Assembly: GCF_026571515.1 (NCBI RefSeq)
Contig: NW_026852705.1
Coordinates: forward strand, 186,001 to 250,000
DNA: 64,000 bases
Direction: 5' to 3'
Origin: Ruditapes philippinarum
Lineage: Eukaryota
How positions within the stretch are numbered: the first letter of the stretch is position 1; the number at the start of each line of letters is the position of its first letter. Of this stretch, positions 47,422-62,839 are shown piece by piece. The position numbers and the translations under genes are program-made. The notes beneath the pieces are model-generated. The model ran no database searches. It saw only the letters and a program-made list of their open reading frames with translations, and had not been told where the DNA came from.

Positions 47422-47620
47422 CTATAGTCCCGTTATCCTATCATTTTATTCCTATAGTAACATGTACTAACCGTTTATAAGTGTTTATACAAAGTGATAT
47501 TTACAGTGACAGAATGCAATGATGCATTACCGTACCCGTAAATATCACTTTGTATAAACACTTATAAGCGGTTAGTACATATGTTACTATAGGAATATAA
47601 TAATAGGATAACGGAACTAT
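47422..47620. mobile_element. ~200-bp near-perfect palindrome (MITE)
   Basis: ctatagtcccgttatcctat..cctatagtaacatgtactaaccg..tatacaaagtgatattt mirrored around a short loop. Confidence 0.8.
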
Positions 47621-50605
47621 AAGTTATTGAATGATTGACGTAGAGAAGAGAAACATGTTTGACTTAATATGAGACCCAATTTGCGTTTAAAAAAGGATTA
47701 AAGATTGAAAACAACAACTAGTATTAACTATTTATTCATATTTTATTTATTAATGATCTACCCTATGACGCCATGTCAACGAGGGGATATCTCAAAAATC
47801 CCAAAAATAACTATTTTGCGTTGATATTTTTCTCAGTGCTGCAACTTTTCAATGGACTGAGATAGAGCCAAAGGCTTTTTAGTGTTGGTTTCACGTTACC
47901 TTAAGATTGACCTGAGGCCTTTTTAGCCTCTCACAAGTCCAAACTTTTCTTGGTGTTGAAGGGGGCTACAAGCAGAAAAGTGTACCCCCTGATGTGTATT
48001 TTTGATAGTGGCGGCGCCGAAAAAGTGATCCCTTTTTAAACAACATTTCGCAATCGAAAACAAGAGTTTGGGGCCTTTATAGTGCATTATTTGATGCCTC
48101 ACTTAAAGGGGTGGGTTGAAAAGGCGTGAAAGCACGTCCCCTATATGAGCTAGGTAATGGGTTAAAGCATGCCAGGGTTTACACAAACACAAAATGATAT
48201 ACTTCATACTGCATTACATTTGATCCACCATGGTATTCGCTTTTAGAATTTCCTTAGGGATGCAGTTTAATTATTAATATCACAGCGAGAACAACACATT
48301 TTCCAAAGAAAACAATGACTTGTGTCTTTAACAAAATGTACGACGCGGTTGAAAATACTCATCCCTTAAACTGAAAACAGATTCTAAAATGGAGATAAAG
48401 ATATTTATTAAATGAAAGTTTGGTGACATCCATTCATGTACCAATTGCTGTGTCCACGACCCCCATAAAAGATGGAGTGCAGGGGACAACAGAAAAAAAC
48501 TTGGATTTTTCTTTCTGCCTGTCTCAACACTGCCGGCTGAATTCTAAAAATGGCCGGAAAATGGCCAAATTAATGTTTTACGGAGTTGGAGGCCATTTTA
48601 ATAAATTGACTAGTACATAAGATAATCTGCATGAGAAAATGCACGAACTAGTGTTCATCAAACCATACTTATTACATAGGTTTACAAGTACAAATGTTGC
48701 TGCAATGCAGCAATTGAGAAGCTCCGCGCAAAAAAAATGCACTCATTACAGATGCCTTACCAAATTACAATGTATTCCTACGCACAGGTCATGTTATATT
48801 CAGATTAAGTACTATTGTAGATTTTTTCCGAATGTTTTTTGTAAACCATTTTTTGGATAATTATACTTAGCTTATGCACTGTCCGTAATGAGAAAGAGGG
48901 GAAAGATATTTAATATAAAAAAATGTTGTCACTGATGCCTACCTGGTAAGGAAAGTAATTCCATTGAATACAAACAAGACTTACAAGACTTGTAAATGTT
49001 ATGTGACATGACTGTACTGTGTTCTGTTTGTGTCACTACTGTAGTCAGTAACATAAGATGATAAAAATATCAAAGTCTGTTTTTTTATTATTATAATTGT
49101 AACAAATATACAAATAGTAACAAAAGGGACTAATATTATAATATAGTAATATTACATGCATTTTTTCATGTCAAATTAAAAAAAAATGGTTTCTTTCAAT
49201 ACTGAAAGTAGAACACACTCTGGAATGAAAAAATGGGATGAATTTCAAAAAGACCAAATTCAGGAATTTTTTGTTTGTTATACACGCGTTACATGGTGAT
49301 ACAGTATTTATCAATATAATAGAAGACTGTTACCTGAATTTTAGGCAGGTATGAGGAAATTCACTAACATCATGTTCGTGCGAGTCAAAGATATAAAAGC
49401 TATTTGACATTGGTGATATATAAAAAAAACTATTGTTAATTGATTTATTTGGGAGATCAATATACATTTTTGTTGCATTGCTTTAAAACCATTCATAGAA
49501 AACATTATACTTCATGTTCAAACTGCAACTCAAAGTTTCTGTTGTTATCAATGATGCTATCTACCTATAGCCTATGCTTAACGAGGGTCCATCCGCTCGT
49601 AAGGCCACATAATGCAGCTTTCGCTGTCGAGTACGGACCCCCGGTCATGTCACCAGTCATACCCTTACAGAGTTTATTTTGAAGAACAAATTGATATGCT
49701 AATGAAATGAAACCTTATATACTAAAGTTTAATTATTTCAAAACAACCAATATATCAACATGTTATTATTTAACATTTAATTTCATAAATATAAATTAAG
49801 AATAATTATCAAAAGCAAAATTATTAAAGTCTTATGTACATTGGCTATACATATGCCAGGTTTGAAGACTTCATATATAACTTGACAGGACCTGATGTAA
49901 GCACATTGGCCACTTTTGATGGGTGTTGCAGGTATATCACTACAAATGCATATTGTCAGGTTCAAAACTAATATATTAATACTTAAATAGTCTAGGATGC
50001 TGTTTCGGTTAACTTTTCGACTTTGTTAAGGGGCGGCAATTTCTTCGCTCGGCACTAATTTTTTTCTATTTTGCTAAAATATTTACATAGAATGTCGCAA
50101 ATAAATTGCTTCTATGTCTGTTTCCCATATAAGAAAGTTATGTGTTTCATTTACAGGCATAGATAGCATACAAGCTTCAAATAAATAGCATTTTAAGGAT
50201 TCTGTCTTAAAATTGACTTAGTTTCAGGGCATGAATATCAACACATACTTAGAGATTGAAATATATTGAAAAAATGTAGCATAATTCAGTTATCTGCCTC
50301 TGAATAGCCTCTTATTTGTAGTTAAGATGCAAAATAGTGATAAGAATTTATTGTTTTCTATTTGGCAATACATATTTAAACATTCACATTGTATAATGCC
50401 ATAGTTTTTAGACTTTATGTCTGTTTAATGCATATTTGAATGAGCATCATAATGGGCAAGAGTATAATTATTTTGTAGAAAAAGATTTTTTAATCAGTAA
50501 AAGTTGATTAACTTTTTCACAATCATATTATGCACTACTGTAACACAGTTTTAGTGTCTCTGATGTGTCTATAAACAGAAAAAGAGCTTATTCAGGTAGA
50601 TAAGA

Positions 50606-51738
50606 CACGGGGGTGGAACCCCATATGTATCTCAAAAATGAGCATCGGTAAAAATTATATGTGAATTTCCGCTGCACCAGATGTGAAGCATAACACCAGA
50701 TGTGACTGTAAAAAATAGGTCAATCGCCGGGTAAGTGTTCATCTTTTTAAACATTTATATAAATTGAATCCTTTTTTAAGAAAATCGAAATGTGATTCGA
50801 CCCTCCTGACTCTCCTCTATTTTACCCATTTTTGTTTTGGATTTCTATGCAGTCTTCATCGAGATATTCTTTCCGTCGTGGGTTCTGGTGTGTCAAAAAC
50901 ATGCAATGTGAAAGACGAAAATGTCACAAAACGGACTCAAAAAACAGATTTTACGAAATTTCACTACAGACCGATGCTTAACATTCAGACAAATCCTGAT
51001 TTAAACATTTATTGAGATTTGGCTGCAAACGAAGGGAATCGCTGCTCAAAATTGCATTTGAGCTCCATATGTGCTGAAGAGATCCATATGTGCATAATAT
51101 GAAAATTTAGCAACATAATTACGCATCTCTTTCATAAAGCAATCTATACGTTATTCTTTTGTGTATCATTCTGAAATAAAAAGTATTATCCGAAACAGAC
51201 ACATTTTCACGAGACGAGCTTGAATAACCGAAAGAGATAAAAGACGTTCTGCATACGAAAGGTTTTGGAAATACGTAGATATAGTGGGAAGGCCTTGCTT
51301 ATTTTCATTTTTTGGCGTCATATGTACTGCAATCATTCCCTTTTTATGCCGTGATGCATTAATTTATTAACTAATTATTCACTCGACTGCACTGTCTGCT
51401 TAATAGGGGAGTAATGTGAAGCGTGTTTGAATTGGTACCATTTTCATTTAAAATATTCATTTGATTTTGCGTTGTTTACGCGAACTGGAGTAGAATAATT
51501 CTTATGGGACAGTTCTTTTGAGGAGGTTTACTTGTATATCACTGCATGGTAACCAGTAAGCAAATATTTGTGTTTGTGAGTGAACATCTATTTAATACAG
51601 GTATCGCGTGGTGCGGTGATTTTTCTTTGATACTCCTCGACTGCTATACGCCAGTAGCATGCTCTATTGATAATAACGCACAGTGCACATGGGTCATTGG
51701 ACTGTACCAAAATTTAGGATGAACCTACACCCCCAACC

Positions 51739-51774
<36 letters not shown>

Positions 51775-53337
51775 GAATTTATTAATTTATTCAGATTGGG
51801 GATAGGTAATGTGGTAATGGGTTTGTATAAAGTTTTGTCTGGTGCATGGACGTACTTGTTTATAAACATTTTAATTTTTTTCTTCATGCTATTTTGAGCT
51901 AGGAGACACTGCCTCTATGAATCTTTTCATGAGTAGCATTACTTGCAATATTATCCATTTCAAGTCCCCTAAAAAATAACAATAATCGTTAATTATCGAC
52001 TTATTGATATAAATTTGAAAATTCATCTTTTGGCATGCCATTAAAAATGTTGATGAAACGGCGGTTAGCGTAATACTGGCGCGTCCCAATTATTTACAGC
52101 TATGTTTTTCGGTGTCTTTGGTCATGCAACCAATCAGGAACACCAAACATACTTCTGATTGGCTTTTATGGTGTGGGGTTTACAATATCGGTCATTGACA
52201 CGTTACATAAAAAGTAACCGAGGTTCCGAGTGGGGAACTTAATTATGAAGAGAAGCCAATTATAAATTGAAATTTCATGTTTATTAAAATTTTCATATCT
52301 GTTTATCATGCGATAAAACAGTTGTAATATATCGAACTCGACTTTTATGTAGAAATATCATAAACCTGGGGCGGCATCTCGGTTTTTCCTTACAGACAAT
52401 GTTCTCGGCCCATATCCTGTAAAGAAAAACCTTCGATGTCGCACCAGGCCATGATATTTCCACATAACAGTCTGTCGCTATTACTATAACTTGTGGAATC
52501 TTAAAGTGATAGATAGTTTTATGAATGTAAGTGTCATATCATAGAAACATATTATATGACACATAGCTTTACAAAGTTCAATACTTTTAGTTTGGTTTGT
52601 CCAAGTAACATATCCTTTATTAGTGAATTGTTTATCATACGAGTATTATCCGCTCTGCGTCAACATTTTCATGTACTCGTGCCTTTTAGTATTTCTAATG
52701 CTAGCATAAGCTAGTGAGTCCTGTCATTGTGGTGATCAAACACACTAATGTTACAATTGAACTTTCAGCCAAAGCTACGAAACCTAAATTGTTTCTAGAC
52801 ATTGGCTATTAATGATGATATTGAAGTGGTCCGTAGTTTCGTAGATGGTTTTTGACATCACTTATGGATCTCTTCAGCACATATGGTGCTCAAATGCAAT
52901 TTTGAGCAGCGATTCCCTTCGTTTGCAGTCAAATCTAAATAAATGTTTAAATCAGGATTTGTCTGAATGTTAAGCATCGGTCTGTAGTGAAATTTCGTAA
53001 AATCTGTGTTTTTTGAGTCCGTTTTGTCACATATATTGCATGTTTTTGACACACCAGAACCTCACGACGCAAAAACATCTCGATGGAGACTGCATAGAAA
53101 TCCAAAACAAAAATGGGTAATATGTAGAGGTGTCAGGAGGGTAGAATCACATTTCGATTTTCTTAAAAAAAGGATTTAATTTTATATAAATGTTTAAAAA
53201 GATGAACACTTACCATGCGATTGACCCATTTTTACAGTCATATCTGGTGTTATGCTTCACATCTGGTGCAGCGGAAATTCACATATAATTTTTACCGATG
53301 CTCATTTTTGAGATACATATGGGGTTCCACCCCCGTG
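50606..53337. mobile_element. Non-autonomous DNA transposon with ~470-bp TIRs and CAC...GTG ends (CMC/Transib-like), copy 1
   Basis: CACGGGGGTGGAACCCCATATG ... CATATGGGGTTCCACCCCCGTG; nested hairpin MITE at ~52350-52465; no transposase ORF. Confidence 0.85.
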
Positions 53338-54619
53338 TCTTATCACGTAGTTCATGGAAAACATTAATCAAATTTGTGCGAATTCATATTGACATTATAA
53401 AACCGAACGAATGCACTAAATGTTTCTGGTATACTGTTTGTCAACTTAAGTTTCCTTTGAAATGTTAACGCTGAATTTACAGCAACTACATCGTTCTTGT
53501 GAAGAGAAATATATAAGGCAGTATTGCTTCGCATAATAGACATATCGTTATTATGATGATAACTTAAATAATTTTGTCACGTAGGTAACTGTCATTTTTT
53601 TTTCAGGATTCGGCTGTCGGAAAACACCAAGTCTTTTATAAATAGATTGAACATGAAACTGCTTTGGTGTACAGTCTACAAAGGATAGGCAGGTGATAGG
53701 CGATCTTCAGGAAAACCTGAATCAGCGGTCACCTGTATTCAGCAGTAACATGGCTTAAACCGCCAAGCAAAAATTGTTAAAAACTTACTTTCTTTTCTCG
53801 GTTACATGCTAGAACTACTGTCAACTGCATTGAAACTGAGGGGCACGGGTTCAAGCCCTAGAAGAGGCAACTTTTTTTTCTTCCTTTTTTTTTCTTTGAA
53901 CATTATTTGTGTCTCTCAGATCACACTTGATAAGAAAAAAGTATTTCATTTTAATTATAAAATTATTATTGGTATTTATTGGCTAAATTGTGCCGAATTT
54001 ATTATCAAATATGGTACCTGATATTTTCAAAGTCTTTTAAAATAAAAAAACTAGACGGTAAACGTATTTCATATTTGACAAGCACAACCAATATACGTTT
54101 AAAAAATATATGCAAACTTTGAAAACAGCCCCTGATTTGAGATAATTTTAAGGATATTTGGAATATAAGGCCCTCCAAGTAGAAAAATGATGAAACAACT
54201 ACTTAAAATGGGTGGGGTAGGGTAACACTTATATACATATTTCAAACATTTTGCGTAGAAACAATAATTTTGCTGGGTCATTTGTTAGCTGAATGCTATT
54301 ACATGTATTTGTTTCTTAAAAATGTTCTATAGGAAAACATTTTTTCATAATGATTAAATAATAGAATATTTAGAGTTACTCATTTCTGAAAAAGAGTCCT
54401 TCTAATAGCCAAGCCTTCCTTAAGAAAAATCTCCATCACTCGTAAACCATACGGGTAAACTTTGTTTAAATTTTGCATTCTTGTGTCTTTTAAGGTATTT
54501 TACTGACCTATGTTGTCAATTTTATAGTTCCTTATAGTGTCCATTAGGGGGCTCATACCGATTCTTTATAAAACATGCATGGTTGTTTGATTTGATTTTT
54601 ATCAATCTACTAAGCTGCC

Positions 54620-54651
54620 TGACGTTAGTGACGTCACAGATTATGACGTCA
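54620..54651 (+). promoter_or_regulatory. CRE cluster upstream of the orphan gene
   Basis: TGACGTTA plus two perfect TGACGTCA (54629, 54644), ~100 bp before the first ATG. Confidence 0.65.
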
Positions 54652-54750
54652 AAAATTAACGTTATCGCTATAGACACAAAAAGCGACATTAAAGAGAGAC
54701 AAGCAAGCTTAATCATACAGTGAGAAAAGAGAGATATATCATCTTTATTA

Positions 54751-57238
54751 ATGGATAAAGGTAAACATTATTTAATACCAGTCCTAATTAATGGTGTTTC
54801 ATTTCATATTCATCTTTTGATAAGTTAGATGACAATTTATGCAGGTAGAAATAACAGATAAAGGTGCAGTCATCTTTGTTATTACTAGGGCTTATCACTA
54901 GTACTTTATTTTTTATATTTCCTGACAGAAAGCCCCCCAATTATGGTCAAAATTGGTTGATCGGGAGTAGATCTATTGTTATTTTGCGATATTTCTAAAT
55001 AAAGATTTTTTTTAAGATTAGAAAATCTAGATAGACTTATTCTGTCATTTATCTAGCTAAAATACAGCGATAATTATTTTCTTACACACTATTTTGAAGA
55101 AATGTCATCATTTCACACAGTCTGCTTATTAAATACATTTTATAAATATTTTACTTGACATCTAACTTTAAATTATTATTTTTTATATATAATTTGATAT
55201 TTATTTATCACTATTCAGTTGAATAAATAGATGAATGAATGAATTTATTAATTAACTAACTGATCTATGCTTTTATTATTATAATTCAAGAATTTCAAGG
55301 GTGATAAAGATGCCAATTAATGTAATTCGAATTCATATAATCTTCTACAGTATGTATTGTATTTCAACATAGATAATATAGGTATTGTTTCATTATATTT
55401 TAATAGATACTTCAAACATGGATACAGAAATAAAGACAGAATCAGAGTCACCCCATAAATTTACTAGCGTTCTTGAACGGAGAAGGATCAAGAGAAAAGA
55501 AGAAGACGAGGCGAATATTGAATGGAGTCCGTTAGAGAAGCCAGATAATTCTGCGATAGAAAGTCGGATGGACAACATCATTGAGAATTTAAAAAAGCAG
55601 TTTAAGCAAGAAAAGTTTGCAAGAAGACAAGCCCCCAAGGTTAGCACTTCCTATAAAGTTTTTTGTAATAGTGTTGACGCTTTCCTTCGTCATCTAGAGA
55701 ACCCAAAAGTCAAATATCAAGAATCTAACAGAGAGTTACCTGGAAATGCTGTGAAACCAGACAAAATAACAAGCACTAAACAAATGTCAGTGGACACACC
55801 AGCTCAAGACAGTCCAGTTCATGATGAAAGTCTTGATGATGATGATGCTAATGCTGCTGTTGATGATGGTGATGATGTTCAACAAGTGAAACATAAAGAA
55901 TGTGAACATTTAATTTCTCAGATGCTTAATAACGTTATTTTGCGCGATTCAAAAACCATCAATTGCAGCGAAGTCTCTTCCTTATCAATGCCTCACTTCT
56001 TTGGTGAGCCAACAGTCAAGAAACTGGTAACACAAACAAAAGCAGACGACATAAAGCCCATGCCAAGTTTATTCCAAAAGAGACATACGAGCAATGCCTA
56101 TTTCTTTTCTTTGAAACAAAAGAAGTTGATCAATGGCTGTTTGCTACCATATTTACTTGCGCCTTCTCCATTTATTGGTTTGAACAGGAAGCAAAAGTAC
56201 ATGGAGTTCTATGAAGTTAAGTTCAAACCTGCAGAAGTGTCTCTTCTCATGAGCAATCCAAAATATAAAGTTGGCGATCACATTAGTAAATGTGAGCATC
56301 TTCCTGTAAACAAGTGTATTGCAACTACTCAAAAGTCCGATATGCCTAATGGCTTTATTAAATATCAGCAGGTTCAAACAGAGAATAAAAATAAATCGAT
56401 AACACAAGACATCGGAAAATCCAAGGTTCCTGACTTTAAAAGAATATTCAGCCTCGCTTTGCGTTACAATAAGGTTCCATGCCCAAGAACACTGTCTATA
56501 TTTGGTTTATATTTTACACCTATACTCTATTTTGGCAGAGAAGCTGAAATGCCACGTTTACCTCACTCTCTAGCAAACTTTACAGATGAACGCAAATCTA
56601 AAAGTCATTACCATATAAGAACGTTGCTAACCCTGACAGCTACGACTTCAGTGAAATATGAATTTTTAACAATGGAAATGGACATAATTACAACATCATC
56701 GTATTTGAACACAAAACATCCTGCCGTAACAGATTTGGACAGTTATAAATTAAAGCCAGTCAAACACATTGATTCATTCGAAAACGTCTTCTTTGATAAT
56801 GTGGCGATCACATCATCGCATTTGAACACCGAGTATCCTGCCGTAAAAGATTTGGACAGTGACAAATTGAAGCCAGCCAAACATGATGATACATCGGGAA
56901 AAGTCTTCTTTGATAATTTTGAGACAATGGAGAAGAACGACAGTAAACAAGTTGAGGTTCAACCTGAAGAACTTGAAGTAATCATTGATGACGATGACGA
57001 TGATTCGCCATTTGGGATACTGTCTGTCTATTGCAGAAGTGGAATTCATTCAAGGTAACTACTAAATACTATCTTAAAACAAAACTTTATACTTTATGAG
57101 AGATTATGTATACATGTATAACTATTTGCTATTTGATGAAATATTTCTTACTGGAAACCTTATGACTCATTTTATTTATGTGTGAACAACAATCACACAC
57201 TTCTTACGATTTATTAATTTATTTTTTGTTTCAGATGA
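54751..57238 (+). CDS. Unrecognised ~553-aa protein
   Basis: Micro-exon 54751-54760 (ATGGATAAAG|gtaaac), large exon 55407-57054 within the 557-codon ORF, last exon from 57235; internal 40-aa tandem repeat. Confidence 0.7.
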
Positions 57239-57683
57239 TTCCACAGATGAAGGCCAATAGATGAACAGAGATAGAAGAATTTTTATTTTTTGGAATTTAA
57301 ATATTTTTACATTATGATTAAAATATTATAATCAAACGTAATTTGCGTTGTTTTCTTTATTTTTAGCTTATAAATGATGGACATTGTATGTTGTGTCTAT
57401 CAATATTTACAGGGTTTTCAGTTATCAAAATACTAAAATTGAATGATTACCGTGTTGAGTCTGGCTATGAAAATGAGAAATATTTCAATATCTTTGAAAT
57501 ATAAATCAGATGATGTTTATCAGAGTTATTGCATAACGTATTTACTTTGTCAGACAAATAGTTTGCAAACTAGTGTCAAATAGTTTCAAATGGAAATCAG
57601 ACATATTGTGCTGTTGATTCAATGGCCTGTTCTTTAAAATATAATATTCTGTTATTAAGTCCCACATATTAAAATTGTTATGT

Positions 57684-57966
57684 TTGTTTGTTTTGTTTTT
57701 GTTTTTGAGTTTTACGTCACATCGACACAGTATAGGTCATATCGCGACGTTCCAGCTTTACTGGTGGAGGAAGACCTCAGGTGCCCTTCCGTGCATTATT
57801 TCAGGCACGAACGGGCATCTGAGTAGAACCACCGACGTTCTGTAAGCTAGCTGGATAGCTTCCTCACATGAAAGAATCCAAAGTCCCTGTCGGGATTCGA
57901 ATCCACAGTGGTGAGGGGCAAGTGGTTTGAAGTCAACGACCTTAACCACTCGGCCACGGACGCCCC
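57684..57966 (-). mobile_element. Intact tRNA-derived Meta-type SINE
   Basis: tggccgagtggttaagg / ttcgaatccc head; gaagctatccagctagcttac..gtggttcta body; (CAAAA)n tail; 13-bp TSD aaaattgttatgt. Confidence 0.9.
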
Positions 57967-59228
57967 AAAATTGTTATGTAAGTAACGTACAATTTCGAAA
58001 AAAAAAACTAGATGAAGGATGCTCCCTCACAAAGTGTTGAAATCAATGATTCCGAAGGACCAGAAAATCTAACAACACTGAAGTGAAGTACGGGCCAACT
58101 TTTTACAGCTGCCGCACGACACTTGAGAAGTAAAGAAATCTTGAAGAAGGGTGATCCCTCGGAAGCATTAATCACAACAAAATAACATGAACATTGCACA
58201 CTTGGTTTGATTGAGTTTGTACATGAGGGATATTGAAAAAGTACAACATCCCTCACACCCCTAACACCGGCTTGAGCGGTTCTTATTCTTGCCTGCGTAC
58301 TTTCTCCCCTAAGATTATGTCATTCAAGAATTCACGTACTTTAAAAAAAATAAACACAATAAATTGTAGTATTGGGGTGTTTCTTGGTAGTTTTGGGGTG
58401 TATTGGGATAATAAGACCGACTTCATTTTGTATACGTCATTAGATAATTACAAAACATTTAAATACAGATATGGTAAAGTTCAATAACGTGATGTAATTT
58501 TTTGAATCTGTATCTAACCAGGGTCTTTCAAATAGAAAAACCCTGATCTAACAAAAATCATGAATAGTGTTTTATTTAAACGAACATACAGTTGACGATA
58601 AGAATTACATGTAGACCATTTTGCAATAAACCTAAATAAGAAATGCTTCTAAAAAAGACTTTGATATACAAAACTGAAGAGAAATTTAGCCAACATGCAT
58701 ATTCTAGAATATTTAGGGATTTGATTTTGCGGCCACCTTTGACGCCATCATTGATATCTCAGCTTCATTTCCATGTTGAGCCAAATGATTCATATTCATT
58801 CTAGTAGCATAAATCTTGGTATATGAAACTTGCTATTGGTTGACATCGACAAGTTACCTTGTAAGTTAGGCTGGTGTATAGCACTTATGAATCGTCACCC
58901 TAAATGACCTCACGATCAATACACCACCGTCAATTATATAAAAGTCGATTAGTTACTTAAGAGTAATTAAAAACAACAACAACAAACAAACAAACATTTA
59001 TTTAGCAATTCAGCATAAAAATGCTTTTAGTCACAATATACAAATGGCAAAAATAAAAAAAATGACATGAAATATCACCCGTTATCGAATAATTAAATGT
59101 ATTTGACTAAGGTAAGTTTAAATTGTAATTCAAATAGAGTGTCAAAGTTGAGAACTATTACATAATTCATTTGAAGGAACTGTTACACGAAGGATGGAGT
59201 TCTTATGGTAACTTGTTTGGAGTTCTTA

Positions 59229-61161
59229 CACGGGGGTGGAACCCCATATGTATCTCAAAAATGAGCATCGGTAAAAATTATATGTGAATTTCCGCTGCAC
59301 CAGATGTGAAGCATAACACCAGATGTGACTGTAAAAAATAGGTCAATCGCCGGGTAAGTGTTCATCTTTTTAAACATTTATATAAATTAAATCCTTTTTT
59401 TAAGAAAATCGAAATGTGATTCGACCCTCCTGACTCTCCTCTATTTTACCCATTTTTGTTTTCTATGCAGTCTTCATCGAGATATTCTTTCCGTCGTGGG
59501 TTCTGGTGTGTCAAAAACATGCAATGTGAAAGACGAAAATGTCACAAAACGGACTCAAAAAACAGATTTTACAAAATTTCACTACAGACCGATGCTTAAC
59601 ATTCAGACAAATCCTGATTTAAACATTTATTGAGATTTGGCTGCAAACGAAGGGAATCGCTGCTCAAAATTGCATTTGAGCTCCATATGTGCTGAAGAGA
59701 TCCATATGTGCATAATATGAAAAATTAGCAACATAATTACGCATCACTTTCATAAAGCAATCTATAAGTTATTCTTTCCCCGAGAAAATAACAATAATCG
59801 TTAATTATCGACTTATTGATATAAATTTGAAAATTCATCTTTTGGCATGCCATTAAAAATGTTGATGAAACGGCGGTTAGCGTAATACTGGCGCGTCCCA
59901 ATTATTTACAGCAATGTTTTTCGGTGTCTTTGGTCATGCAACCAATCAGGAACACCAAACATACTTCTGATTGGCTTTTATGGTGTGGGGTTTACAATAT
60001 CGGTCATTGGCACGTTACATAAAAAGTAACCGAGGTTCCGAGTGGGGAATTTAATTTATGAAGATAAGCCAATTATAAATTGAAATTTCATGTTTATTAA
60101 AATTTTCATATCTGTTTATCATGCGATAAAACAGTTGTAATATATCGAACTCGACTTTTATGTAGAAATATCATAAACCTGGGGCGGCATCTCGGTTTTT
60201 CCTTACAGACAATGTTCTCGGCCCATATCCTGTAAAGAAAAACCTTCGATGTCGCACCAGGCCATGATATTTCCACATAACAGTCTGTCGCTATTACTAT
60301 AACTTGTGGAATCTTAAAGTGATAGATAGTTTTATGAATGTAAGTGTCATATCATAGAAACATATTATATGACACATAGCTTTACAAAGTTCAATACTTT
60401 CAGTTTGGTTTGTCCAAGTTACATATCCTTTATTAGTGAATTGTTTATCATACGAGTATTATCCGCTCTGCGTCAACATTTTCATGTACTCGGGCCTTTT
60501 AGTATTTCTAATGCTAGCATAAGCTAGTGAGTCATGTCATTGTGGTGATCAAACACACTAATGTTACAATTGAACTTTCTGCCAAAGCTACGAAACCTAA
60601 ATTGTTTCTAGACATTGGCTATTAATGATGATATTAAAGTGGTCCGTAGTTTCGTAGAAGGTTTTTGACATCACTTGTGGATCACTTCAGCACATATGGT
60701 GCTCAAATGCAATTTTGAGCAGCGATTCCCTTCGTTTGCAGTCAAATCTCAATAAATATTTAAATCAGGATTTGTCTGAATGTTAAGCATCGGTCTGTAG
60801 TGAAATTTCGTAAAATCTGTGTTTTTTGAGTCCGTTTTGTGACATTTTCTTCATTCACATTGCATGTTTTTGACACACCAGAACCTCACGACGGAAAGAA
60901 CATCTCGATGAAGACTGCATAGAAATCCAAAACAAAAATGGGTAATATAGAGGAGTCAGGAGGGTAGAATCACATTTCGATTTTCTTAAAAAAAAGGATT
61001 GAATTTTATATCAATGTTTAAAAAGATGAACACTTACCCGGCGAATGACCTATTTTTACAGTCATATCTGGTGTTATGCTTCACATCTGGTGCAGCGGAA
61101 ATTCACATATAATTTTTACCGATGCTCATTTTTGAGATACATATGGGGTTCCACCCACGTG
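59229..61161. mobile_element. Same long-TIR element, copy 2 (internal ~800-bp deletion)
   Basis: Same orientation and near identical to 50606-53337, lacking ~51160-51965. Confidence 0.88.
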
Positions 61162-62839
61162 ATAAATGTGCACAAAGGGGTTGATTCTGCACAACTTCAG
61201 TGAATTACCTCCCTTTATTTATTTAGAAACTGAGATAAGTGCATAAATTCTAGTTTTTGGCTACCTAATTGTGAAGAAAATACACAAATACTCTCATTCC
61301 AAGTACATTTTGGTCTGAAGAGGTGATTTACATGGTAAAACACATGAAAGAAGGTTTCAATTGTCATATTTGGTTCCTAATGAATGCAAAAGTGGCCAAA
61401 AAATGGGTGTAGAAGTCAAATTTTAGGCTATCACTCTGCTGTTAAGTCCAGAGGAACTTGGTTTTTCCATATATTGCATTTTTTATATCCATGAAAGAGA
61501 GAAACAAAATATATATAAGTAAATTTTGGCATTTTATTAACATTTAGGCTTGTATTTAAGAGTATATTAGCATATATTTTGAGTAGAAAAATATAGCAGG
61601 TGCAGTTTTAAAATACCTAGTTACACCCAAAATGTTGCTATGTGTGTACAAATAGTGTGTAATCCATGATCAGGTCACTTTACAGTTGTTATTAAGTATG
61701 TTTGCTAAGCTAAATCTTCATTCAGGAAGTCTATTGGTAATAAAATGTTAAATTTGGGTGAAAAATCACTTATTTTGTTATGGGTTGGGTGATAAAATTG
61801 CTCACTGCTACATCCTTTTGTTACAAAATTAGTATTTTGAAGCACTTTTGTAATGAGAACAGTGTAGTTTTGCTATCTGAGTGATTTTATAGAAGTTGTT
61901 ACAAAATTGGCTTCAGAATAATGAATTATGTATGAAACTCACATGCTTACATTCATTTTCAGAATATCCGAAATGCGGCATAATGGCGCTTGTTAGAAAA
62001 AAGGGAACTTCAAAGTTTTAAATGACTTAAGAGTGGTGAAAATGCATCCATATAATTGGTAATTGTATATGCAACTTCATTTATTATTATACATTAGAAT
62101 ACTAAACATTTAATATTGCCTTAAGGTCAGGGTATCGCATTGTAACATGGCCAGCGATTGGCTGAAAAAAGTGCAGGGAAAACCGTATGATTCAATTTAT
62201 ACATGAGGTGATTGGATGAAGATGGGGTATTTTTAAGTATAAAAACTAATTTTGAAAGTAACACTACATTGTTTTCTGAAGAAAATGAAATATTTCAGGA
62301 GTCTCTATGATAATTTTGACTTGGATATTTGCATTTATAGAAAGTGTATGTCAGTGCTGTGATCAGCAGAAAATTTCTATGAAATGGGGGGTAATCCTCT
62401 TTGAAGTCATTTTGCAAAAAATTTAGTTGGCTACCCCTATATAACAGGAACATTTTTATGTGTCAGGCATTTCATTCTGCTAGAAAAATCACCTCTTTAG
62501 CATGAAAACTCAATTTAAAGGTATGATAAGGGACCATTTCTTATAATTAAGTCTATGGAAATATCAATATGAGTGTCTGACCACAGCAGGTGTACTAGTC
62601 CGTAATTTCAGGGGAGAGAACTCCAGGCATTCCGTATGATTACGGTACGTGAAAGATACGAGAAAAAGCGTCTACATCCTGGAGATAATAAACAACTGTT
62701 GTCGTTTTTTAATGGTTAACTTAAAAGGTAATTATAATTTTAGACATACAGGTACGAAAATATTTTCCTTAGTTTATGGTGATTTAAAAGGCGGTCACTG
62801 TTCACGTGACATTTCTTATCAACTTCTTGTAAATAACTC

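What the first reader, a model, noticed from the sequence alone, without database searches (positions are those of the whole stretch)
50600..61167. Two direct-repeat long-TIR transposons with swapped 5-bp flanks enclose a whole gene: cointegrate or integrated-circle signature
Seen: copy 1 is ataaga|CAC..GTG|tctta and copy 2 is tctta|CAC..GTG|ataaa. Neither copy has its own direct TSD. The inner flanks match each other exactly (TCTTA/TCTTA) and the outer flanks nearly (ATAAGA/ATAAA). The 5.9-kb segment between them carries a complete CRE-promoter gene. Known: CAC termini with 5-bp TSDs characterise Transib-related elements, and A-[TE]-T-X-T-[TE]-B is the product of cointegrate formation or of a single crossover between a TE-bearing circle and a chromosomal copy. 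Inference: a gene-bearing circular DNA may have been integrated through this element, i.e. a eukaryotic gene-moving composite unit. Caveats: a 5-bp match in AT-rich DNA can be chance, and copy 1 flanks are also a 7-bp inverted pair (gataaga/tcttatc), which could instead reflect target preference or an inversion.
Basis: partly seen in the sequence, partly recalled or inferred. Interest (0 to 1): 0.78.

Follow-up and report, generated by a model that had tools for sequence, protein, structure and literature searches.

The report
Gene-carrying composite transposon inserted twice
Two copies of a small cut-and-paste transposon and the clam gene lying between them behave as one 10.6-kb mobile unit that has landed in at least two places in this genome, a route for moving host genes that is known from maize and flies but is rarely caught in an animal genome.

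Summary
TE1 (50606-53337) and TE2 (59229-61161) are direct-orientation copies of a non-autonomous long-TIR family with CAC..GTG ends. The flanks read ATAAGA|TE1|TCTTA ... TCTTA|TE2|ATAAA. The family TSD is 5 bp, perfect in 9 of 15 paired copies.

The outer flanks are a real TSD. The DNA left of TE1 and right of TE2 is one copy of a 3.3-kb repeat. All 10 uninterrupted copies I fetched read GGTAGATAAATGT across the site. So 50606-61161 (10,556 bp) is a single insertion at ATAAA, with one extra G in the left copy.

A second copy of the composite lies on contig C10677. It has the same gene|TCTTA|TE junction, different flanks and a perfect outer GGGGG TSD. All TE arms of both composites form one clade apart from 30 other arms.

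My reading: this is a composite (macro)transposon that the transposase moved as a unit by its outermost ends. TE1 and TE2 descend from one ancestral insertion at TCTTA beside the gene.

It is not needed either, and I found no permuted donor junction. Short-read contigs could not test the assembly. This is a known kind of element (maize Ac macrotransposons) in a new setting.

The parts
48685..50605 (+). Left part of the host repeat R: block A (48685-49836) and block D (49835-50603), ending in the left copy of the target site (ATAAGA, 50600-50605)
   Evidence: many copies at 89-95% identity. In 22 places listed in both, D is followed directly by B with a 4-base overlap.
50606..53337 (+). TE1: complete non-autonomous long-TIR element (2,732 bp, CACGGGGG...CCCCCGTG, about 490-bp TIRs), forming the left arm of the composite
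   Evidence: No stop-free stretch longer than 98 codons.
53338..53807 (+). Inner left flank: TCTTA (53338-53342), 22 more unique bases, then an old dispersed repeat 'repC' (53365-53807)
   Evidence: bases 1-27 match only the window itself, while 28-470 match many copies at 71-81% for near-full-length hits and up to 92% for short partial hits.
53808..54559 (+). 752-bp repeat 'M', SINE-like with a tRNA-type head (my reading of the sequence). It sits exactly where homology to the native upstream DNA of the gene family stops, and I saw no TSD.
   Evidence: about 30 copies at 90-93%, all spanning 471-1222 of the query; sequence.
54560..59228 (+). Passenger gene segment 'geneX': two TGACGTCA motifs (about 54630-54651), an intact ORF (55385-57058), 3' flank, ending in the inner right TCTTA (59224-59228)
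   Evidence: Paralogues in tandem arrays on C6800 and C12706 (83-88%, one at 94-96%). Only 2 protein hits, both uncharacterized proteins named for one clam species.
59229..61161 (+). TE2: internally deleted sister copy of TE1 (1,933 bp), forming the right arm of the composite
61162..62582 (+). Right part of the host repeat R (block B), beginning with the right copy of the target site (ATAAA, 61162-61166)
   Evidence: 40 copies at 91-94%, 39 of them starting at query base 1 and one at base 3; 10 of 10 uninterrupted copies read ...GGTAGATAAATGT....

Best explanation
Window 50606-61161 is one 10,556-bp composite transposon. Two sister copies of a non-autonomous element (5-bp TSD, CAC..GTG ends, Transib-like) bracket a 5.9-kb piece of host DNA that carries an intact lineage-specific gene.

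Shown:
- The whole unit is a single insertion into a 3.3-kb dispersed/tandem repeat at the site ATAAA. The duplicated site sits at the two outer ends, and the left copy has gained one G.
- A second, older and decayed copy of the same composite sits on another contig with its own perfect outer TSD (GGGGG) and the same inner gene|TCTTA|TE junction.
- All TE arms of the two composites form one small subfamily found nowhere else in the assembly.

Inferred:
- A transposase supplied in trans synapsed the outermost left and right ends and pasted the whole unit. This is macrotransposition, or a maize-type composite insertion.
- TE1 and TE2 are two copies of one ancestral insertion (T0) that made the TCTTA duplication beside the gene. 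That is why both inner flanks read TCTTA.

How T0 plus its flanks became doubled is open. I split the options as follows:
- About 45%: a composite formed once and then moved, with TE1 and TE2 later homogenised by gene conversion. Formation would be by unequal crossing-over in the tandem gene array or by alternative transposition.
- About 30%: the two loci are independent composite insertions made from one donor by sister-chromatid or reversed-end transposition with re-replication, as described for maize Ac.
For: - Empty sites: the left flank (repeat D) and right flank (repeat B) are contiguous, with a 4-base overlap, in 22 places listed in both. All 10 of 10 fetched copies read GGTAGATAAATGT where the window has ggtagATAAgA|TE1...TE2|ATAAAtgt.
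- Family TSD of 5 bp: 9 of 15 paired copies are perfect.
- Second copy on C10677: GGGGG|TE left part (TE1 positions 1-1043, 95.0%), then 485 bp, then the gene segment (88-95%), then ggagtTCTTA|CACGGGGG, then a 165-bp mini element, then |GGGGG.
- The flanks of that copy are unrelated to the window's flanks.
- The 485 bp is native upstream DNA of the gene family: 91% to C6800 and about 70% to four other paralogues.
- Tree of 35 arms: the five composite arms form a clade with 97/98 support, apart from 30 arms of 15 other copies.
- No other member of this subfamily exists. For the TIR, the best hits outside the composites are 95% or lower. For the TE1-specific interior, the best hit elsewhere is 89%.
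- Macrotransposons and composite insertions flanked by a TSD are documented for maize Ac (passages read in PMC9910405 and PMC4270019).
Against: - The window's outer TSD is not perfect (ATAAGA versus ATAAA).
- The outer TSD on C10677 rests on a 5-base match only; no empty site was found for it.
- TE1 and TE2 are closer to each other (1.8% substitutions; sister arms at 97/93) than the two composites are to each other (5-11%). A single origin therefore needs gene conversion, and independent origins need a donor that is absent from the assembly.
- The two composites differ at the inner left. The window has a complete TE1, TCTTA, repC and M. C10677 has TE position 1043 abutting native upstream DNA. 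So the TE1|TCTTA junction exists only in the window.
- The transposase is unidentified: 17 copies are non-coding, and the one RAG1-like locus I examined shares no sequence with the element.
- Public read contigs were too short to confirm the assembly across TE1.
- The 7-bp inverted match of TE1's flanks (chance about 1e-4 from base composition, my estimate) is explained only loosely, by AT-rich target choice plus the one-base insertion.
Confidence: 0.75

Rival explanations
1. A circular DNA carrying one element (TSD TCTTA) plus the gene segment recombined with a resident solo element that had inserted earlier at ATAAA in the repeat. Alternatively, it formed a replicative cointegrate there.
For: The anatomy fits exactly: outer flanks are the TSD of one insertion and the inner flanks are identical. 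The gene belongs to a tandem array. Tandem arrays are a known source of one-unit circles (recalled). TE1 and TE2 are sister copies.
Against: The second composite has a different outer TSD, so the same two-step history would have to happen twice, or a later composite transposition is needed anyway. No other member of this subfamily exists as a solo resident copy. No contig joins the end of the segment to its start. On C10677 the left element is cut at position 1043 and abuts native upstream DNA, which a clean crossover does not predict. Replicative transposition is not known for this kind of transposase (recalled).
Confidence: 0.1
2. An ordinary macrotransposon made from two independent insertions on either side of the gene. 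In this case the identity of the inner flanks (TCTTA/TCTTA) is chance, helped by the family's AT-rich target choice.
For: Target 5-mers recur among unrelated copies: ATAAA twice, and ATTAT/ATAAT several times. My rough estimate is that two insertions share a 5-mer 1-2% of the time. The inner segment would then be colinear host DNA and no permuted donor is expected, as observed.
Against: The chance is about 1-2%. The two elements are each other's closest relatives within a subfamily that has no other members. The DNA next to TE1's inner end (27 bp plus repC) is unrelated to the native upstream DNA seen in C10677 and five paralogues.
Confidence: 0.07
3. Assembly artefact: a repeat-induced mis-join threaded an unrelated gene segment between two collapsed copies of a family with more than 1,000 copies.
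For: The family is very abundant (1,246 first-look candidates). The assembly holds duplicate contigs of single loci: C9620, C6560 and C4461 carry the same insertion. Read contigs did not bridge the TE1 junctions.
Against: TE1 and TE2 are distinct sequences, with an 806-nt indel and 34 substitutions. The gene|TCTTA|TE junction is seen independently on C10677, where the right element is only 165 bp. The outer flanks fit one empty site to the base. The TE1-specific interior and the gene are present at single-copy-like depth in 4 runs from 4 studies.
Confidence: 0.03

Closest known systems
Maize Ac/Ds macrotransposons and composite insertions (Huang & Dooner 2008; Zhang et al. 2014; Wang et al. 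2022). I read passages of PMC9910405 and PMC4270019; the other papers are known to me only from their reference lists.
   Same: Two linked copies or termini of a cut-and-paste element in direct orientation, with host DNA between them. The unit is bounded by a left and a right terminus, flanked by a TSD of the family's length, and found at more than one site. The inner DNA is a duplicated piece of the donor's flanks. The gene or enhancer is copied along with it.
   Different: The superfamily differs: 5-bp TSD with CAC ends, not hAT with an 8-bp TSD. The host is an animal (bivalve) germline. These are old natural events inferred from one assembly, not observed transpositions. Both arms are non-autonomous with about 490-bp TIRs. 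No donor locus or reciprocal product is available.
Bacterial composite transposons and IS26-type translocatable units or cointegrates (recalled; titles only seen)
   Same: Direct repeats of one element bracket a passenger gene.
   Different: This is a eukaryotic nuclear element. There is no evidence of a circular intermediate or of replicative transposition. A second copy has its own TSD, as expected for movement by the outer ends.
Transib / RAG-like (RAGL) transposons, including non-autonomous copies in molluscs (PMC1131882 section 8 read; PMC7204232 passages read)
   Same: 5-bp TSD. Termini begin CAC and end GTG. Non-autonomous copies flanked by TSDs are reported in an oyster. RAG1-core-like coding sequence is present in this genome.
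   Different: Beyond CAC the terminus (CACGGGGGTGG...) does not match the protostome RAGL consensus CACTWMCAAACKTYKBB quoted in PMC7204232. The TIRs are about 490 bp long. Target sites are AT-rich, whereas Transib and RAG prefer GC-rich targets (PMC1131882 section 8). No transposase has been linked to the family.
Drosophila foldback (FB)-flanked 'TE' composite elements of Ising (recalled, not checked in any call)
   Same: A large host segment is moved between two copies of a long-inverted-repeat element in an animal.
   Different: The element family and TSD differ. Those cases span tens to hundreds of kb and were found genetically.

Membership tests
Composite (macro)transposon | Two copies of one element bracket host DNA, with a left end and a right end facing outward | tested here: met
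   direct orientation, with intact CACGGGGG and CCC(A/C)CGTG outer ends.
Composite (macro)transposon | A TSD of the family's length flanks the whole unit, and an empty site is known | tested here: met
   Window: ATAA(G)A / ATAAA, with 10 of 10 uninterrupted repeat copies reading GATAAATG. C10677: GGGGG / GGGGG, but no empty site was found for it.
Composite (macro)transposon | The same unit is present at two or more loci with unrelated flanks | tested here: met
   The window and C10677 share the TE left arm, the gene segment and the TCTTA|TE junction, while their flanks are unrelated.
Composite (macro)transposon | Excision or insertion of the unit observed, or a presence/absence polymorphism | not testable with these tools
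   The host site is a repeat with many copies. The one read-laying run gave only short contigs.
   X bases 1-27 occur only in the window. The end of X occurs only in the window and on C10677. Paralogues on C2128 and C9111 do not continue into the start of X. Only 40 candidates were scored per search, and only one assembly was searched.
   No second haplotype of this site was found. C2389 covers only the far left flank.
Maize-type composite insertion (alternative transposition plus re-replication) | TE termini flank duplicated donor-flank DNA, with an internal junction of two segments | tested here: inconclusive
   There are candidate junctions. In the window it is 53807/54560, with repeat M between them and no TSD. 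On C10677 it is TE position 1043 abutting native upstream DNA. Both can also be later deletions.
Maize-type composite insertion (alternative transposition plus re-replication) | A donor locus still holds the element with both flanks | tested here: not met
   No copy of the gene above 96% and no solo subfamily member is present in the assembly.
Transib / RAG-like superfamily (for the element itself) | 5-bp TSD | tested here: met
   9 of 15 perfect, 2 of 15 matching at 4 of 5, 3 of 15 offset by one base, 1 of 15 with none.
Transib / RAG-like superfamily (for the element itself) | TIR begins with an RSS-heptamer-like CAC... | tested here: inconclusive
   CAC/GTG is present in nearly all copies. 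The rest of the terminus does not match the consensus quoted in PMC7204232; I compared it by eye.
Transib / RAG-like superfamily (for the element itself) | An autonomous member encodes a RAG1-core-like DDE transposase between the same TIRs | tested here: inconclusive
   17 copies are non-coding. There are 12 PF12940 matches in the genome. The one locus I fetched shares nothing with TE1 and has no flanking TIR within 6.5 kb. The other loci were not examined.
Transib / RAG-like superfamily (for the element itself) | Preference for GC-rich targets (typical of the superfamily, not defining) | tested here: not met
   The TSDs are mostly AT-rich: AGTAA, ATAAT, ATTAT, TAAAA, ATAAA, GTAAT and others. 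The contrast is with PMC1131882 section 8.

The most novel reading that the evidence does not exclude
The two loci are independent 'composite insertions'. The left end of one sister copy and the right end of the other copy of a single donor element were pasted into a new site during S phase. The element and its flanks were then re-replicated, and the broken forks were joined. This gives TSD|TE|TCTTA-downstream flank-junction-upstream gene-TCTTA|TE|TSD. It would be the first natural evidence outside maize Ac/Ds, in an animal and with a RAG/Transib-like element, that alternative transposition coupled to re-replication duplicates and disperses host genes.
Probability: 0.3. Interest if true: 0.7.

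Novelty: new member of a known kind. Interest (0 to 1): 0.5.

Why it matters
This is a natural case in an animal genome where a cut-and-paste element with a 5-bp TSD has carried an intact host gene, with its promoter region, to new chromosomal sites as part of a 10-kb composite. Both insertion sites are readable to the base. Gene movement by macrotransposition is well documented experimentally only for a few systems such as maize Ac. If the element is truly RAG/Transib-like, the case also bears on what that transposase family can do with paired ends that lie far apart. In practical terms, it explains a puzzling 'swapped TSD' pattern without invoking a circle. It also gives a clear genotyping test (empty site, solo element or full composite) to decide between the mechanisms.

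Tried and rejected
- **Inversion between the long TIRs of TE1 and TE2.** This predicts TE1's right flank to be the reverse complement of TE2's right flank (TTTAT). The observed flank is TCTTA, so I rejected it from the sequence.
- **Reversed-ends insertion into the element's own excised circle.** This predicts an ATAAA...TAAGA footprint inside X. The four loose pattern matches (54999, 58626, 57072, 57202) have 3-9 filler bases and no support from any other result. Once the outer flanks proved to be one TSD, the footprint was no longer needed.
- **X as a transposon inserted at TCTTA between two abutting elements.** The ends of X are not inverted repeats, and X is a mosaic of repC, M and gene DNA. 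Rejected.
- **Search for a permuted donor.** X start, X end and paralogues on C2128 and C9111 gave nothing. Each genome search scored only 40 candidates.
- **Search for a solo donor element.** One search found none above 89% apart from C10677.
- **Empty site for the C10677 copy.** Searches found none. The flanks there are a young repeat starting about 60-66 bp out on one side and a short-TIR repeat starting 4 bp out on the other.
- **Transposase.** Pfam found nothing in the passenger ORF. The elements have no long open frames. The RAG1-like locus L072 has no link to the family.
- **Read check.** One search used 4 runs from 4 studies on 50300-56299. The contigs are short: the longest listed piece on the stretch is 701 letters. 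None of the 32 listed pieces bridges 50605/50606 or 53337/53338. A loose end at 50603 in X7 is the sequence of another copy of the repeat (identical to L063), not an empty allele. The assembly therefore stays unconfirmed by reads.
- **Earlier notes of the scan** had nothing on this place.
- **Supplementary files** of PMC7204232, which list the TIRs and TSDs of mollusc RAGL and non-autonomous elements, were not opened. They might hold a related terminus.
- **Literature on novelty.** I found no paper linking Transib to macrotransposition or composite insertions. The searches were macrotransposon / composite transposon / direct orientation; Transib / bivalve / target site duplication; Transib / macrotransposon / alternative transposition / composite insertion: 19 papers hold at least 2 of the terms, 12 were listed, and none makes the link by title or abstract start.

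Full report
**1. What is there**

The window is G000:C1192:186001-250000. Two copies of one repeat lie in direct orientation: TE1 at 50606-53337 (2,732 bp) and TE2 at 59229-61161 (1,933 bp). Both begin CACGGGGGTGG; TE1 ends CCACCCCCGTG and TE2 ends CCACCCACGTG. Both have terminal inverted repeats of about 490 bp. TE2 lacks 806 nt of TE1's interior. It differs from TE1 by 34 substitutions over about 1,926 aligned positions, 12 in the left ~1,190 nt and 22 in the right ~732 nt.

The segment between the copies (X, 53338-59228, 5,891 bp) holds an intact 557-codon ORF (55385-57058). Two TGACGTCA motifs lie about 750 bp upstream of it.

**2. The family**

The 495-bp arm gave 1,246 first-look candidates in the 1.4-Gb genome. 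The 40 that were scored were 92-100% identical. I obtained both ends for 15 copies:
- 9 have a perfect 5-bp TSD (AGTAA, ATAAT, ATTAT, TAAAA, ATAAA, GTAAT, AAGAC, TATCA, CTCAT).
- 2 match at 4 of 5 positions.
- 3 are offset by one base; two of these read as 6-bp repeats.
- 1 has no TSD.

L036 and L039 are the same insertion on two contigs in opposite orientation. That leaves 14 independent loci, 8 of them perfect. So the family TSD is 5 bp and one-base irregularities are not rare. All 17 copies examined (1.8-3.6 kb) are non-coding; the longest stop-free stretch is 121 codons.

**3. The outer flanks are one target site**

The 769 bp left of TE1 (49835-50603, 'D') and the 1,421 bp right of TE2 (61162-62582, 'B') are each repeated many times at 90-94%. 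In 22 places listed in both calls, D is followed directly by B, and the two alignments overlap by 4 bases.

I fetched ten such places. All ten read ...TTATTC(T/A)GGTAGATAAATGTA... without interruption. The window reads ...ttattcaggtagATAAgA|TE1 ... TE2|ATAAAtgtgcac. So the whole 10,556 bp from 50606 to 61161 is one insertion into a copy of this repeat at ATAAA, with the usual 5-bp duplication. The left copy carries one extra G. In the window the repeat runs A (48685-49836), D, then B. Elsewhere it also forms tandem arrays.

**4. A second copy of the composite**

Contig C10677, read in reverse, has the following layout:
- ...agcGGGGG|CACGGGGG, starting an element left part that equals TE1 positions 1-1043 at 95.0%. 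This includes the interior that TE2 lacks.
- 485 bp.
- The gene segment, matching window 54560-59228 at 94.8, 93.4, 93.0, 88.7 and 88.5% in successive blocks.
- The same junction ...ttggagtTCTTA|CACGGGGG....
- A 165-bp mini element made of the two terminal ~90 bp.
- ...CCCCCTTG|GGGGGagt.

The five bases outside the two outer ends are both GGGGG. From base composition I estimate the chance of this at about 1e-4.

The DNA beyond those ends is unrelated to the window's flanks. The 485 bp is the native upstream DNA of the gene family: 91% to a paralogue on C6800 and about 70% to four others. The gene on C10677 is broken by repeat insertions of 645 and 356 bp. That copy is therefore older and decayed, while the window's ORF is intact. 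I found no empty site for C10677.

**5. Kinship of the arms**

In a maximum-likelihood tree of 35 arms, the four arms of TE1 and TE2 plus the left arm on C10677 form one clade (support 97/98) apart from 30 arms of 15 other copies. Within that clade the two left arms of the window are sisters (97/93), with C10677 next. The two right arms are also sisters.

No other member of this subfamily turned up. For the arm, the best hits outside the composites are 95% or lower. For TE1's specific interior, the best hit is 89%, against 95% on C10677.

**6. The passenger**

The gene segment belongs to a family in tandem arrays on C6800 and C12706, at 83-88% identity with one copy at 94-96%. The protein has no Pfam match. 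It has only two database relatives, at 100% and 73% identity. Their sources name both as uncharacterized proteins of the clam Ruditapes philippinarum.

X is a mosaic, in this order:
- TCTTA plus 22 unique bases.
- An old dispersed repeat (53365-53807; 71-81% to near-full-length copies, up to 92% for short partial hits).
- A 752-bp SINE-like repeat with no visible TSD (53808-54559).
- The gene-family DNA, from 54560.

Homology to C10677 and to the paralogues starts exactly at 54560.

**7. Reading**

Two things are established. The unit is bounded by a left and a right element end and is flanked by a family-length TSD at a site whose empty form is known. The same unit also sits at a second locus with another TSD. 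That is the signature of a composite transposon pasted by its outermost ends. Maize Ac macrotransposons and composite insertions are the documented parallel (passages in PMC9910405 and PMC4270019).

The identical inner flanks are best explained if TE1 and TE2 are copies of one ancestral insertion that made the TCTTA duplication next to the gene. Three points support this: the two elements are sister copies, the subfamily has no other members, and I roughly estimate a chance match of two target 5-mers at 1-2%.

How that insertion and its flanks were doubled is not settled.
- **(a) Formed once, then moved.** Unequal crossing-over in the tandem gene array, or an alternative-transposition event, made a composite that then moved by cut-and-paste. 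This explains why no donor is left. It needs gene conversion to make TE1 and TE2 (1.8% apart) younger-looking than the two composites (5-11% apart), plus one deletion in each locus.
- **(b) Two independent composite insertions from one donor.** This explains the tree and the different inner left junctions directly (a complete TE1 plus downstream flank in the window; an element cut at position 1043 on C10677). It needs a donor at about 98% identity, which the assembly lacks.
This gives the same anatomy. It needs a resident solo copy of a subfamily that has none, needs it twice, and has no permuted junction in its support.

I put (a) plus (b) at 0.75, (c) at 0.10, two independent insertions with a chance TCTTA match at 0.07, and an assembly artefact at 0.03.

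**8. What stays unexplained**

- TE1's two flanks form a perfect 7-bp inverted pair (GATAAGA/TCTTATC). The left one is the host repeat's GATAAA with one inserted G. Part of the match therefore reflects AT-rich target choice. The inserted base might come from a short conversion tract running out of the inverted arms; this is speculation.
- The right third of TE1 is more diverged than the rest (long branch).
- The SINE-like repeat sits without a TSD exactly at the edge of gene-family homology.

**9. Superfamily**

A 5-bp TSD with CAC...GTG ends is the Transib/RAG-like hallmark (PMC1131882 section 8; PMC7204232 passages). The genome holds 12 matches to the RAG1 core model over its cut-off. Several features do not fit:
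- Only CAC matches the published protostome TIR consensus.
- The TIRs are very long.
- The targets are AT-rich rather than GC-rich.
- The one RAG1-like locus I examined shares nothing with the element.

I therefore call it Transib-like by its ends and leave membership open.

**10. Assembly**

Twenty runs from 9 studies hold 39-69% of the sampled words of the gene segment. I laid four runs on 50300-56299. They show the gene and TE1's specific interior (51452-51662, with 0-1 differences in three runs) at low, single-copy-like depth. Their contigs are too short to bridge either end of TE1. The assembly is thus supported indirectly: by the second locus, by the base-exact empty site and by the differences between TE1 and TE2. 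It is not confirmed by reads.

**11. Verdict**

This is a gene-carrying composite transposon, a known kind of thing in a new element family and host. It was caught with two insertions and a legible history.

Noticed in passing
window 48685-50603 and 61162-62582; also C5191:495321-528668 and C5529:20780-33024: The host repeat has blocks A (about 1,150 bp), D (769 bp) and B (1,421 bp). It occurs both as single dispersed units and as tandem arrays, with periods of about 2,541 and 3,429 bp on C5191 and C5529. On C3279 the order is D-B-A.
   Followed up: partly
window 53808-54559: A 752-bp repeat (about 30 copies at 90-93% among those scored) with a tRNA-like head (GGGTTCAAGCCC box). It is probably a long SINE. 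Here it has no visible TSD and sits exactly at the edge of gene-family homology.
   Followed up: partly
window 56693-56924: A 117-bp tandem duplication (82% identity) lies inside the passenger ORF. It is also present in the paralogues on C10677, C12706 and C6800.
   Followed up: no
C9620, C6560, C4461 (L036, L039, L032): The same element insertion (TSD ATAAT, identical 12-bp flanks) appears on three contigs. Two are in opposite orientation, and the element lengths differ (2,698 versus 3,555 bp). These are likely uncollapsed haplotypes or recent duplicates in the assembly.
   Followed up: no
C2389:115-3268: A short contig matches window 47600-49857 at 95-97%, with an extra stretch of about 890 bp, and ends near the start of repeat block D. 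It may be the other haplotype of the far left flank.
   Followed up: no
G000: C11460:28679-30058, C11980:49236-51088, C7606:258998-260858 and others: There are 12 matches to the RAG1 core model (PF12940) over its cut-off. One is a 544-codon open frame on C11460. Most of the others carry in-frame stops. No TIR was seen within 6.5 kb at C11460.
   Followed up: partly
window 51735-51775 (inside TE1): A run of about 14 C followed by about 16 A, then more A-rich sequence, in the TE1-specific interior. Read contigs appear to be cut there (one search reports 51722-51780 as a skipped repeat).
   Followed up: no
C10677:54600-55151: A unit of about 550 bp with 50-bp terminal repeats that recur elsewhere in the genome (MITE-like). 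It ends 4 bp from the right end of the second composite.
   Followed up: no
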